Of a stretch of 64,000 nt of DNA, positions 39,151-44,204 are shown in pieces. The notes below the pieces were generated by a model. That model saw only the letters and a list, made by a program, of their open reading frames with translations. It made no database searches and was not told the DNA's origin. Both the position numbers and the translations under genes were made by a program. The stretch is from Anaeramoeba ignava BMAN (Eukaryota > Protista > Anaeramoebae). Position 1 is the first letter of the stretch; every line of letters begins with the position of its first letter. The stretch is taken from assembly GCA_028826165.1 (NCBI GenBank), contig JAPDFW010000076.1, positions 351,892-415,891 of the forward strand, read 5' to 3'.

Positions 39151-42100
39151 ATGTTACAAAAAGTTTTTTTGGTTTTATTTTTCTTTTCAATTGTTTTTTC
39201 TCATTCTGCAAGTGAATGGAAACAAAGTAGAGTAATTTATCAACTTTTGACAGACAGATTTGCTAAAACAACAGGAAATACAGGTTCATGTGCAGATTTA
39301 TCAAATTATTGTGGAGGAACTTTTCAAGGAATTATCAACCATTTAGATTATATTAAGGGGATGGGATTTAATGCAATTTGGTAAACAAGAAAAAAAAAAT
39401 TTAAAAAAAATTTAAAAAAAATTTAAAAAGTCGAAAAATTTTTTTTATTAAATTTTTTTGTTTAATTTTGAAAATAGGATTTCTCCAATTCCAAAAAACA
39501 CAGAAGGAGGTTATCATGGATATTGGCAACAAGATATTTATGAAGTTAATCCACATTTTGGTTCTGCAGATGATTTGACAAATTTAATTAAAGCAGCTCA
39601 TGATAAAGGTATTTGGGTTATGGGTGATGTTGTTGCTAATCATGTGGGAAATGTTGATATGGATTTCGCAGCAATTACACCTTTTAATACTTCTGATTCT
39701 TATCATTCAAAATGTCAAATTGTGGATTGGAAGTAAAATTTAAATAAAATTCATTTAAAAAATTAAAATTAAAATTAAAATTCATTTATAAAATTAAAAT
39801 TAAAATTAAAATTAAAATTCATTTATAAAATTAAAATTAAAATTAAAATTAAAATTAAAATAAAATTAAAATTACAGTCTTCCCAAACGATTAGAGATTT
39901 TAGCAATAAGAGATTTTTTTTTTATTTTTCCCAATCAATAAAAGAAGTAAACTATTTTCAACACAAAAAAAAATTTCCCTATTCCTTTTTTTATTGAGAT
40001 TTTTTCATGTTTCCAAAAAGTTGTTTCCAAATAAAAATGAAACTCTGGAAATGAATAATTATTCCTCAAGTTGACTCTCTCGAACAAAAAGAGATTTTGG
40101 GTTATTTTCAAGGAATAAAAATCCAAGAATAAAAATCAGAAAAAGAAAAAGTTAGTTCCTGGATTTCAAGAGTTTGAATATGCGTGCTTATTGAATCAAA
40201 TCCATATTTATTCGAGAAATTTTGAGAATATGAGAATTCAAACATTTAGAGAATTTGATCATTCTTCATCATATTTAGTAATGTGGATTGAGAAACATAC
40301 AGCTTTTCTCATTTACACAGATCAAATGTTATCTTAGAAAGAAGAAACGAGTGAATAAAAAAAAATGAAAGAATGATGATAGCTTCTTGTTTTATTTCAA
40401 AATTGGGAATTTCTTCTTGAAAAAAATGAAAAAAAATTTGAATTAAGTTTGAATGAATGAAAAAAATTTTGAATTAAGTTTGAATGAATGAAAAAAAATT
40501 TGAATTAAGTTTGAATGAATGAAAAAAAAGAATTTGGAATTGGTCTTTAAAATTAGACCAAGCAAAATATCTTTTGGAAACCATTTTCAAAGTATTTAAT
40601 AAATTGTCTTTTTTTTCTTTCTTTTTTTCTAATTTAGAATTCAAAGGATTCGAGCGACATTTCTTTCCTATTTTTCGTATTCTCTTTACTAACTGGCGAA
40701 TTTCAGCATGCTCCTTTTGGATTTTGGCAGGTTTTGCTTTTAGGTCATCTTTCTGGAACAGATCAAAAATGATATTTCTAAAAATTTCTCCATCTTTGGG
40801 ATTCAGAATTTCTCTTATCTCTTTAACAGATTTCTTTTCGAAAATTCTTAATTGAATATACTTTGAAACAAATACTAATCCACCCAATTATCTTGAATCG
40901 AATTTTCAAATTCGACTTCAGAAAAATCAAATTTCCATTTTTCTGCTATAGATTTCCCAAGTTCTGTGAGATGAGAATATCCGTTTAGAGAACTAAAGAA
41001 TTCAAACTTGTGCCTCTTTATTGATCAAAAAGAACCCAATGCCTCTCTTCAACCATTGGAGCTATTATCCATGTTCCATCAAAGTCTTCATCAAATTTTT
41101 CTAATTGATTTGCAATATCTTCCTTATCACCACTTTCTAAAACAAACATCTTGCCTTTTGAAAAGAACTTTTCAAGGAATTCAGCAAAGAATCTTCTGAT
41201 TTGAGGCAGCTATTCTTTTTCTCCAACTGAATTGATCGTGGTGTGTGTGGTATTTTCTTTTATTTATTGCATCTATACTTTTTAGAAAAAGTTTTTGATA
41301 ATCAGTTTTTTTTGATTTGGAAAACTTGTTTTTCTTCAACCTTTTTAAAATTTAGTCTTCCGATTTTTGTACAGTTCTTTTCTCGATATTTTCCTTTTTC
41401 TTTTCTTTTCACTTGATGTTGATTGTAACTCTATTATTCAGGAACAAAACTTGTTTTTCAAAATAAATCGGATAACACCAGTATGTCGAAAAATTCCAAA
41501 AACACAGTAGGAGGTTATTCAACTCTTAATGGGAATCTATTTCATCTCTGGCTAATTTTCCTTTTTGATCTATGATAGGTAAATTTGAGAGTTATATCCT
41601 TTTTGAATGTTACCAATTTATCCAAATGGAGAATTCCCGTCATCTTTCCTGGTACATATACTAACAAGTGACTTTTGAGAGTGAAATCTGTGTTATATGA
41701 GGTATAAAAACTTCTTTCAGCCAATCGATCATTTAGACCAACCAGATGAGGAAAGGAAATTTTGTTGGGTATTAAAATTTTCAAAGTTGCCTTGACAATG
41801 AATGTGGGCGGAATGGATCAGCAAGCAATTACAACTGCCATTTGATGATTTTTTTTTGTACTCTCTGATCATTCCTGAGTTTATCTGATTTAATGGATGA
41901 AAAATTTCAAATTTGGAGAATGATCAATCATTGGAAACAAAATTCGCATTCAAAAATCTTTTTCGCAAGTATTGAAGAGAAAAGAATATTTTAAATCAGT
42001 TTGGAAAATAATATGGCCAATTCTTGGATACTCTTTTTGATTTTTGGGAATCATTGAATCTTAAAGTTGTTGAATAAATGTCAAAAAAGATCCTTTCACT

Positions 42101-44204
42101 AATTTTTGATTCAAAATTGCTTCCGTGCTCGTTTTGAATTAATGTTTCTCCTCTCGGAATGAAAATTGGAGTCTTCCATAAATTTTTTTAGTTGACTTAA
42201 AATGCTTTTTAAAATTTGCTTTTACCTTTAAAAATTTTTGTTGGAAAGTTTGTCTTTTTGTGGTAATTTTGAACAAGAAAAAGTTTTTGTTCATTTTTGA
42301 AGGAACTTTAAGAAAAATAAAAATAATCGACAAAATTTTTGTCAGGCATTTTTCACCTTTTGCCAAATAAAAGAATAAAAAGAAAAAGATTCAAAAATCA
42401 AAATAAAATCAAAAAGTCAAAATTAAAAACCAAATCATAGAATTTTTATCTTTATTTTAATTGAAAAACTTGATCAAAAAAAAGTTTTTTTCGTAAAATC
42501 TCTAATCGTTTGGGAAGACTGTAGTATTAAAATTCATTTATAAAATTAAAATTCATTTATAAAATTAAAATTAAAATTAAAATTAAAATTAAAATAAAAT
42601 TAAAATTAGTATTAAAATTCATTTATAAAATTAAAATTAATTTATAAAATTAAAATTCATTTATAAAATTAAAATTAAAATTAAAATTAAAATTAAATAT
42701 AAAATTAAAATTCATTTAAAAATTAAAATTAAAATTAAAATTAAAATTGAAATATTAAAATTAAAATTAAAATTAAAATTAAAATTAAAATTAAAATTCA
42801 TTTATAAAATTAAAAATAAAATTAAAATTAAAATTAGTAATCAATGGCAAGTGGAAAATTGTCGTCTTTGTAATCTTCCTGATTTAGCTCAAGAAAATGC
42901 TTTTGTTAAAACAACTTTATTAAATTGGGTTCATGATATTGTTCAAAATTATGGATTTGATGGAGTAATTAAAATTTAAATCAAAATTCAAAATTTAAAA
43001 TTTAAAATTAATTATGAAAACAAAAATATTTATCTGAATATTTTAGTTAAGAATTGATACAACTCAAGAAGTTCCTAAAGTAAATAATGAAAGAAAAATT
43101 GAATTTAAATCAATCATTTCATGTTTATGTTCTTATTTTTGAAAAAAAAAAATAATAAATTTTTTTCTTTAATTAGGATTTTTGGACTTTATATTCTCAA
43201 TCAGCAGGAGTTTATACAGTTGGAGAAATTTATAATGGAGAGTAAATTTATCCAAAACAAAACAAAAAAATTTTGAAAGAAAAATTAATTTCTAAATTGA
43301 TATCTTTTGTTTTTTAAATTGTTTGAAAATTTTTTTTATGATTTTTAGTGTTGGATATGTTGCTGGATATCAAGGATGCATTGATGCTACTTTAAGTTAT
43401 CCTCTTTATTTCACACTTATAAGTGTTTTTGCAAACAAACAATCAATGTATCAAATCCAATCTGAATATGAAGCTTATGCAAGTAATTTTCCAGATATGT
43501 CAATTCTTGGAACTTTTATTGATAATCATGATCAACCACGTTTTTTGGATTTAAATGGAGATTATACTTCTTATAAAAATGCAATTGCTTTTGTTTTGAT
43601 GGCTGAAGGAATTCCGATTATTTATTATGGAACAGAACAAGGATTTGCAGGAGCAAGTGATCCAAAGTATAAATAATTTTAATAATAAATAAATTTGATT
43701 TTATTTTAATTTGAATTTGAATTTTAATTTTAATTTTAATTTTATTTAATTTTTAATTTTTTAAGTAATCGTGAAGATTTATGGAGATCTGGTTATAATG
43801 AAAATTCAGAATTATATCAATACATTAAGCAAATTAATGAATTTAGAACATCAAGTAAATTTGATAATACACAAAAACAGATACAAAGATATGCAGATGG
43901 TAATTTTATTATAAATCAATTAAAATCACAAAAAAAATCAATTGTTTTTAAAATAAAATATATTTATATTATTTTATAACTTTTATTTTTAGATAATTTC
44001 TATGCATTTACTCGAGGAACTGTTTTTGCTGCTTTTACTAATAAAGGAACAAATGGACAAGTTTCTCGATTGATTACTTATCATCCTTATTCTGATGGAA
44101 CAAAATTATGCAATTTGTTTGATTTAAGTGATTGTTTTGTTGTTAATAACGGACAATTTACAATTAATTTGAATGGACTTCCCAAAATTTACTATGAAGT
44201 TTAA
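39151..44204 (+). CDS. Secreted alpha-amylase, GH13 fungal-type; exons 39151-39380, 39478-39732, 42838-42964, 43047-43079, 43177-43241, 43349-43666, 43766-43899, 43993-44204
   Basis: Signal peptide, [20 protein letters not shown], catalytic RIDT / GEI / [15 protein letters not shown]. Confidence 0.95.
40432..40528. repeat. Three ~31-bp tandem repeats inside the transposon
   Basis: AAAAAATTTGAATTAAGTTTGAATGAATG x3. Confidence 0.85.
40745..41208 (-). pseudogene. Decayed Ulp1/SENP8-like peptidase C48 domain within the transposon
   Basis: Across frameshifts: [15 protein letters not shown] / [11 protein letters not shown] / IQDNWVD / VFVSKYIQ...FRNIIFDLF. Confidence 0.65.
41542..41845 (-). pseudogene. 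Decayed pogo/Tigger-type DDE_1 transposase remnant
   Basis: [16 protein letters not shown] resembles TVVLAC..G.KLPP.IIFK; [22 protein letters not shown] resembles VIPGG.T..LQPLD..V...FK. Confidence 0.6.

What the first reader, a model, noticed from the sequence alone, without database searches (positions are those of the whole stretch)
39875..42521. Pogo-like transposon carrying a Ulp1/SENP8-type deconjugating protease
Seen: 28-bp perfect TIRs starting CAGT and a TA duplication. The minus strand carries DDE_1-like motifs (41542-41845) followed by a protease-like sequence: [52 protein letters not shown]. Restoring a single 4-nt deletion (GAT T[GTGG]A GTA) gives QDNWVDCGVFVSKY, the clan CE HW...QxNxxDCG signature, with spacing like SENP8/DEN1. 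The expected catalytic Asp position reads Ser in this copy. Known: C48 proteases are cargo of Mutator/Kaonashi, CACTA, Ginger and Zisupton elements; I do not know them as typical cargo of TA-inserting pogo elements. Inference: a transposon family encoding a deSUMOylase/deNEDDylase, possibly countering SUMO- or cullin-dependent host silencing, in a genome rich in BTB (cullin-3 adaptor) genes.
Basis: partly seen in the sequence, partly recalled or inferred. Interest (0 to 1): 0.85.

Follow-up and report, generated by a model that had tools for sequence, protein, structure and literature searches.

The report
Pogo transposons fused to SUMO-type protease
A small cut-and-paste jumping gene of the anaerobic amoeba Anaeramoeba ignava makes one protein that joins its transposase to a SUMO/ubiquitin-removing type of protease, a cargo known from other transposon groups but for which I found no report in this group; the copy in this window only looks broken, most likely because of a genome-assembly error.

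Summary
Real. 39875-42521 is a pogo-type (DD35D) DNA transposon of Anaeramoeba ignava with 28-bp perfect TIRs and TA on both sides, lying in an intron of an alpha-amylase gene. A second copy (contig C41, 3,203 bp) holds one intact 763-aa ORF: CENP-B-type HTH, DDE_1 transposase, linker, clan CE (C48) protease with His, Gln and Cys, helical tail. Four families at 32-58% identity share the fusion and form one transposase clade; three have Asn at the third catalytic position, this one Ser. A related protease-plus-tail module sits on Harbinger-type elements. Ulp1 cargo is known from Mutator, Ginger, CACTA, Crypton and NeSL; an ESM Atlas cluster shows DDE_1+C48 in basidiomycetes too. Substrate and anti-silencing role are untested. 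The scan noted this fusion before on other DNA of this genome (s1-686614, s1-686665).

The parts
39873..39874 (.). TA dinucleotide, left target-site copy
   Evidence: sequence; TA also flanks both ends of the C41 copy and of families B and C where both ends were held; empty site not seen
39875..39902 (+). 28-bp terminal inverted repeat (3' end of the element relative to its gene)
40440..40532 (.). three 31-nt tandem units just behind the stop codon (3' untranslated part)
   Evidence: sequence; identical in the C41 copy
40540..40750 (-). C-terminal helical, basic tail (about residues 696-763); the stop codon is missing in this assembly copy (5 nt short at 40539)
   Evidence: two long helices in the model; runs X1 and X3 carry the five bases
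40750..41240 (-). Peptidase C48 / clan CE domain: His594 codon 41041-41039, Ser611 codon 40994-40992, Gln644 codon 40895-40893, Cys650 at the 4-nt gap 40877/40876
   Evidence: intact copy: Pfam PF02902 E 1.4e-8; model pLDDT 88, Z up to 18.9 to clan CE structures; all four runs carry the missing bases
41240..41420 (-). Lys/Ser-rich low-complexity linker, variable in length between families
   Evidence: 22% identity between families against 46% for the DDE core and 37% for the protease
41420..42294 (-). Transposase: N-terminal DNA-binding part with HTH_Tnp_Tc5 and DDE_1 core (D194, D311, D347 = DD35D in the intact copy; D347 codon 41622-41620; ATG at 42294); riddled with small deletions in this assembly copy
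42494..42521 (-). 28-bp terminal inverted repeat (5' end of the element)
42522..42523 (.). TA dinucleotide, right target-site copy
   Evidence: sequence
39733..42837 (+). Intron (GT...AG) of a host alpha-amylase gene that contains the element amid AT-rich hexamer repeats
   Evidence: PF00128 E 6e-16 on the upstream exon; record 20 of run X5 holds 39477-39732 and 42845-42964 with 7 letters between; the reading frame continues across GT 39733 / AG 42836-37

Best explanation
An autonomous, young pogo-superfamily DNA transposon family of Anaeramoeba ignava. SHOWN: the intact form (3.2 kb) encodes one 763-aa protein, HTH - DD35D transposase - flexible linker - clan CE cysteine protease - helical tail; it is transcribed; the protease was gained once in an ancestor of at least four families and kept while the linker drifted. 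INFERRED from pogo biology: the transposase binds the TIRs, excises the element and inserts it at TA. INFERRED, the mechanism I think most likely (about 50%): the tethered protease is a ubiquitin-like-protein isopeptidase, SUMO the likeliest substrate, that acts in cis at the element's ends, removing SUMO (or ubiquitin) from the transposase itself, from neighbouring chromatin proteins or from repair factors, so that the transposition complex escapes SUMO/ubiquitin-dependent repression or degradation. The window copy is a real insertion of this family whose sequence was most likely eroded during long-read consensus polishing, plausibly because only part of the reads carry the insertion.
For: One ORF with PF03221, PF03184 (E 5.7e-24) and PF02902 above cut-off. 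Same architecture in families B (C20, C114), C (C1) and D (transcriptome protein P0010); families B and C have their own TIRs with TA flanks. Invariant across families: W536, H594-W595, Q644, D649-C650-G651. Protease identity between families 37% against 22% for the linker. The five protease-bearing transposases form one branch (SH-aLRT 99) beside two protease-less A. ignava families (quick tree). Best solved relatives by profile are SENP1 and SENP2; fold is clan CE. Run X5, spliced at GT-AG joints and so RNA, holds a 2,879-nt contig from just before the ATG to 39920. Sister copies are 98-99% identical. Artefact: share of window words in runs 0.38-0.44 against 0.42 shared with the C41 copy and 0.52 private; at every listed difference all depth carries the C41 letters; the assembly was polished with three rounds of Racon on nanopore reads (PMC11550330).
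Against: No activity data. Family A has Ser where Asp (or Asn) is expected, which may lower or abolish activity in this family. Sequence and fold cannot separate SUMO, NEDD8 and ubiquitin specificity: Z-scores for SENP5, SseL, pS273R, OtDUB and NEDP1 lie within about 1 of each other. Protease-less pogo families with intact ORFs coexist in the genome, so the protease is not needed for pogo transposition here. I could not identify the host SUMO gene (one search was swamped by ubiquitin). Logan contigs can drop rare variants, and no read spanning the C77 junctions was seen.
Confidence: 0.6

Rival explanations
1. The protease acts in trans as a general anti-silencing factor, lowering SUMO- or cullin-dependent repression across the nucleus.
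For: Many unrelated transposons in this genome carry deconjugating enzymes: Harbinger-type C35/C98 and C117, and C68; scan notes report Kolobok and Sola2 cases (unchecked). The genome has many ubiquitin-like domains.
Against: Covalent fusion to a sequence-specific DNA-binding transposase favours local action; few copies; no SENP8 affinity; no evidence linking BTB genes to silencing.
Confidence: 0.2
2. The protease processes its own polyprotein (as viral clan CE proteases do), releasing or activating the transposase, or the domain serves mainly as a non-catalytic SUMO/ubiquitin-binding module.
For: Asn at the third triad position resembles the viral polyprotein protease pS273R (my knowledge; the paper was not held), which scores Z 16.5. 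Family A has Ser there. A long exposed linker separates the domains.
Against: No conserved Gly-Gly cleavage motif is seen in the linkers; His, Gln, Cys and the Trp lid are all kept, as in Ubl isopeptidases; SENP1/2 are the best profile matches.
Confidence: 0.12
3. The window copy is truly degenerate: a host process deletes short G/C-richer stretches from transposon copies.
For: About 55-105 deletions in the 5' 2 kb with almost none in the last 1 kb; G+C falls from 34% to 30% in the hit part. Such a process would be new.
Against: None of the private words or letters is in four runs from two samples, although the single-copy flanking exons are. Sister copies of other families are 90-99% identical without this pattern. 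Polishing of a partly present insertion among AT-rich flanks predicts the same pattern.
Confidence: 0.05
4. The protease is neutral cargo, captured by chance and hitch-hiking.
For: Protease-less relatives persist; family B copy C20 has lost the tail.
Against: Catalytic and lid residues are invariant across families that are only 32-58% identical, and the ORF stays fused.
Confidence: 0.03

Closest known systems
pogo superfamily, DD35D families Passer and Fot/Fot-like (Gao et al. 2020, PMC7386202)
   Same: DDE_1 core, HTH_Tnp_Tc5 DNA-binding domain, DD35D spacing, short TIRs, TA ends, single ORF
   Different: C-terminal C48 protease and tail; that survey never mentions Ulp1, C48, SUMO or protease. 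Family-level placement was not tested against reference sequences.
Ginger1 transposases with C-terminal Ulp1 or OTU domain (Bao et al. 2010, PMC2836005)
   Same: Protease fused in frame at the C terminus of a DDE transposase; same proposed link to SUMO/ubiquitin control of repair or transposition
   Different: Ginger1 has a Gypsy-integrase-like transposase and CCGG/CCGT target duplications; unrelated to pogo
Ulp1-bearing Mutator (Kaonashi), CACTA, Crypton and NeSL/Utopia elements (cited in PMC2836005, PMC8978399, PMC3212892, PMC4640811)
   Same: Transposon-borne C48 protease
   Different: Different transposase or retroelement; often a separate gene rather than a fusion
ESM Atlas cluster, 1,151-aa representative, DDE_1 69% and Peptidase_C48 53%, 64 members, commonest Basidiomycota
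   Same: Same pair of domains in one protein
   Different: Larger; no sequence relatives of the A. ignava protease were found outside A. ignava, so probably an independent capture; I could not read its members
SENP1/SENP2/Ulp1 SUMO proteases and clan CE relatives (SnCE1, SENP5, SseL, pS273R, NEDP1)
   Same: Fold (Z 15-19), His, oxyanion Gln, Cys, Trp lid
   Different: Only 16-19% identity; third triad residue Asn (families B-D) or Ser (family A) rather than Asp; extra helical tail

Membership tests
pogo superfamily | DDE_1 transposase core | tested here: met
   PF03184 E 5.7e-24 on the intact C41 copy
pogo superfamily | CENP-B-type HTH DNA-binding domain | tested here: met
   PF03221 E 1.5e-5, above cut-off
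pogo superfamily | DDxD catalytic triad, x = 29-59 (35 in Passer and Fot) | tested here: met
   D194, D311, D347 = DD35D in all four protease families; ranges from PMC7386202
pogo superfamily | Short TIRs and copies at different sites | tested here: met
   28-bp TIRs; two copies with different flanks
pogo superfamily | TA target-site duplication | tested here: inconclusive
   TA on both sides of every complete copy examined, but no empty site was seen; junction regions were skipped as repeats
pogo superfamily | Placement among named pogo families in a tree | not tested
   no named reference transposases were held; tree used unnamed hits
Peptidase C48 / clan CE | Profile match above Pfam cut-off | tested here: met
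   30.7-35.3 bits against 20.7; also families B, C, D
Peptidase C48 / clan CE | Clan CE fold | tested here: met
   model pLDDT 88; Z 18.9, rmsd 2.1 over 168 residues to SnCE1; Z 16.0 to SENP1
Peptidase C48 / clan CE | Catalytic His and Cys, oxyanion Gln, Trp lid | tested here: met
   H594, C650, Q644, W536 invariant and aligned to SENP1's
Peptidase C48 / clan CE | Asp (or Glu/Asn) as third triad residue | tested here: not met
   Ser611 in family A (both copies and all runs); Asn in families B, C, D and the Harbinger-borne copy
Peptidase C48 / clan CE | Isopeptidase activity on a ubiquitin-like protein | not testable with these tools
   needs an assay
SENP8/NEDP1 deneddylases | Closer to SENP8 than to SUMO proteases | tested here: not met
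   profile E 0.15 for SENP8 against 1.9e-10 for SENP1; only 22-28% over short stretches to the host SENP8-like exon on C109; structural Z ties
Kaonashi / Ulp1-bearing Mutator elements | MULE transposase, long TIRs, 9-11-bp target duplication | tested here: not met
   DDE_1 transposase, 28-bp TIRs, TA ends

The most novel reading that the evidence does not exclude
In A. ignava a SUMO/ubiquitin-based defence against DNA transposases is strong enough that unrelated superfamilies (pogo, Harbinger-type, others) have each gained a deconjugating domain and even exchanged one protease-plus-tail module; the pogo fusion is an active in-cis counter-defence enzyme with an unusual His-Asn/Ser-Cys site, in elements still moving in culture.
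Probability: 0.25. Interest if true: 0.8.

Novelty: new variant of a known kind. Interest (0 to 1): 0.5.

Why it matters
Why so many transposons carry SUMO or ubiquitin proteases has been asked since the Kaonashi and Ginger papers and, as far as I could find, never tested directly. This element is a compact test system: 3.2 kb, one intron-free ORF, short TIRs, a pogo transposase of a kind that usually works alone in foreign cells, four natural variants, and protease-less sister families as controls. It adds pogo to the list of carriers and shows a protease module shared between two superfamilies in one genome. The artefact is a practical warning: broken transposon copies in this assembly may not be broken in the organism.

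Tried and rejected
Pfam on the window's own fragments: no DDE_1 or C48 hit. Single-sequence PDB search: nothing; the family profile was needed. Homologue searches for the protease outside A. ignava: none with E under 0.01, none among the best 150 representatives, none in viral contigs; 14 metagenome loci were generic C48 genes without a transposase; these searches are limited by word sharing and length windows. Eight long pogo-like hits had no C48. Search for the host SUMO gene was swamped by ubiquitin repeats. The careful tree did not finish; the quick tree was used. Literature searches and reading of PMC7386202, PMC5751038, PMC10799480, PMC12730594 found no report of pogo plus Ulp1; Repbase and subscription journals were not searchable. 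Element depth above flank depth in three runs was considered as a sign of more copies but not used: contig depth is not copy number and AT bias is strong. Real deletion-driven decay was rejected on the read evidence.
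Full report
Observation. Bases 39875-39902 and 42494-42521 form a perfect 28-bp inverted pair that starts CAGT, with TA on both outer sides. The minus strand holds the DDE-like and protease-like fragments described. In the 42.8-Mb, 147-contig assembly the TIR occurs four times, as the ends of two elements, and the reversed control pattern never. 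The host is Anaeramoeba ignava.

The intact copy. The second element, C41:7972-11174 (3,203 bp, locus L031), has different flanks and one uninterrupted ORF of 763 aa from the first ATG. Pfam finds HTH_Tnp_Tc5 (86-145), DDE_1 (225-383, E 5.7e-24) and Peptidase_C48 (555-685, E 3.4e-7; 1.4e-8 alone), all above cut-off. The catalytic aspartates D194, D311 and D347 give DD35D, the spacing of the Passer and Fot families of pogo (PMC7386202). The protease reads HW ... An AlphaFold model of the C-terminal part (pLDDT 88) matches clan CE proteases: Z 18.9 to Simkania SnCE1, 16.7 to SENP5, 16.5 to SseL and ASFV pS273R, 16.0 to SENP1, 15.9 to NEDP1. A profile of the family finds SENP1 at E 1.9e-10, SENP2 at 4e-9 and SENP8 only at 0.15. 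So the domain is clan CE; SUMO is the best guess for its substrate, and nothing singles out SENP8.

A family trait, not a one-off. The genome holds two more families with the same single-ORF layout at about 40% identity: B (C20, C114) and C (C1, with a 5' part on C67), with their own TIRs and TA flanks. A fourth, D (P0010, 32%), is a complete ORF in the A. ignava transcriptome but has no intact copy in the assembly; a degenerate relative lies on C86. W536, H594, W595, Q644, D649, C650 and G651 are invariant; the third triad position is Asn in B, C and D and Ser in A. Identity between families is 46% in the DDE core, 37% in the protease and 22% in the linker, so the protease is under constraint. 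In a quick tree of the DDE core the five protease-bearing proteins form one branch (SH-aLRT 99) next to two protease-less A. ignava families: one gain is the simplest reading, though the careful tree did not finish and the root is unknown. Sister copies within families are 98-99% identical, which points to recent movement.

A shared module. Harbinger-type elements on C35 and C98 (DDE_Tnp_4, HTH_Tnp_4) end in a protease plus helical tail that is 23-28% identical to the pogo one over about 240 residues (E 1e-20 to 1e-27), far closer than either is to the host SENP8-like exon on C109 or to the proteases on C117 and C68. This suggests exchange of the module between superfamilies or a common source; the direction cannot be told. 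Earlier scan notes describe the pogo fusion on other contigs (s1-686614, s1-686665) and Harbinger, Kolobok and Sola2 fusions to Ulp1- or USP-type enzymes; I checked the pogo and Harbinger cases myself, not the others.

The window copy is probably an assembly artefact. It is 556 nt shorter than the C41 copy through about 55-105 small deletions, depending on alignment settings, nearly all in the 5' 2 kb, while the last 1 kb is almost identical; G+C in the hit part falls from 34% to 30%. Of the window's 31-mers, 42% are shared with C41 and 52% are private. Public runs hold 38-44% of the sampled words, the shared part and no more. Laid on the window, contigs of four runs from two samples carry the C41 letters at every listed difference, including the four bases at 40876, with no depth left for the window version, while single-copy flanking exons are covered. 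The assembly was built from nanopore reads with three rounds of Racon (PMC11550330). My inference: the insertion is present in only part of the reads and polishing eroded it towards the AT-rich flanks. Limits: contigs can drop rare variants, and the junctions lie in repeats that the tool skipped, so neither the filled nor the empty site was seen directly.

Setting and expression. The element lies in a GT-AG intron (39733-42837) of an alpha-amylase gene. Run X5 skips GT-AG introns of that gene and so is RNA; one of its contigs joins the exons on either side of the element, and another, 2,879 nt long, covers the element from just before the ATG to 39920. The intact ORF is therefore transcribed, from which copy is unknown. 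Family B and D sequences are in the EukProt transcriptome.

Mechanism. Shown: anatomy, conservation, fold, transcription. From established pogo biology: TIR binding, excision, insertion at TA. Inferred: a protease tethered to a TIR-binding transposase is best placed to act locally, removing SUMO or ubiquitin from the transposase, nearby chromatin proteins or repair factors, and so shielding the complex from repression or degradation (about 50%). Action in trans on silencing or cullins, self-processing, and a binding-only role are the rivals. Ser at the third triad position may weaken family A. Protease-less pogo families thrive in the same genome, so the domain is an aid, not a requirement.

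Comparison with what is known. C48 cargo is known from Mutator, Ginger1 (fused at the C terminus), CACTA, Crypton and NeSL/Utopia elements (PMC2836005, PMC8978399, PMC3212892, PMC4640811). The pogo survey does not mention it, and nine paper searches found no pogo case; Repbase could not be searched. The pairing is not unique, however: the best ESM Atlas hit (score 0.90) is a 64-member eukaryotic cluster, commonest Basidiomycota, with DDE_1 and Peptidase_C48. No sequence relative of the A. ignava protease turned up elsewhere, within the limits of those searches.

Verdict. A real, constrained, transcribed pogo-protease fusion: a new variant of a known kind. Interest 0.5, mainly as a compact system for testing why transposons carry deconjugating enzymes and as part of a genome-wide pattern.

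Noticed in passing
L049/L050 (C35:572776-576705, C98:16848-20777): Harbinger-type transposase ORFs ending in a protease-plus-tail module related to the pogo one (23-28% over about 240 aa): module shared between superfamilies.
   Followed up: partly
L068 (C117) and L071 (C68): Two more transposase-like ORFs with a second type of clan CE domain (His-Phe/Tyr ... Asn ... Gln-Cys-Gly), closer to each other than to the pogo module; C117 has DDE_Tnp_4.
   Followed up: partly
L078:528-3062 (P0138, ENA metagenome contig): An unrelated pogo-type transposase with a C-terminal region that has USP-like Cys and His boxes (UCH E 0.007, below cut-off); no TIRs found in the 5.3-kb contig.
   Followed up: partly
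P0010, P0017 (EukProt transcriptome); L052 (C86:195441-198875): A complete fourth family is expressed but has no intact copy in the assembly; C86 holds a broken relative at about 55-60% identity. More elements may be missing or garbled in the assembly.
   Followed up: partly
genome-wide: At least 96 ubiquitin-like domain matches, including polyubiquitin arrays on C75 and domains inside ORFs of 1,300-1,500 aa on C70, C24, C59 and C74.
   Followed up: no
L062 (C109:127747-128016): Exon of a host SENP8/NEDP1-like gene with a canonical His-Asp-Cys site.
   Followed up: partly
L038, L039, L041, L042, L047, L048, L055: At least four protease-less pogo-type families with TIRs and TA ends (2.2-2.4 kb and 1.6 kb); natural controls.
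   Followed up: partly
window:39050-43250: Secreted-type alpha-amylase (GH13) gene with several introns filled with AT-rich hexamer repeats; expressed in run X5.
   Followed up: partly
L035:982-1760 (C1, family C): The linker of family C is expanded by an in-frame Glu-Asn-Glu-Thr-type microsatellite of about 190 codons without breaking the ORF.
   Followed up: no
L037:2493-3770 (C67): An ORF with an endonuclease-like start (non-LTR retroelement-like) lies next to the 5' end of the family C copy.
   Followed up: no
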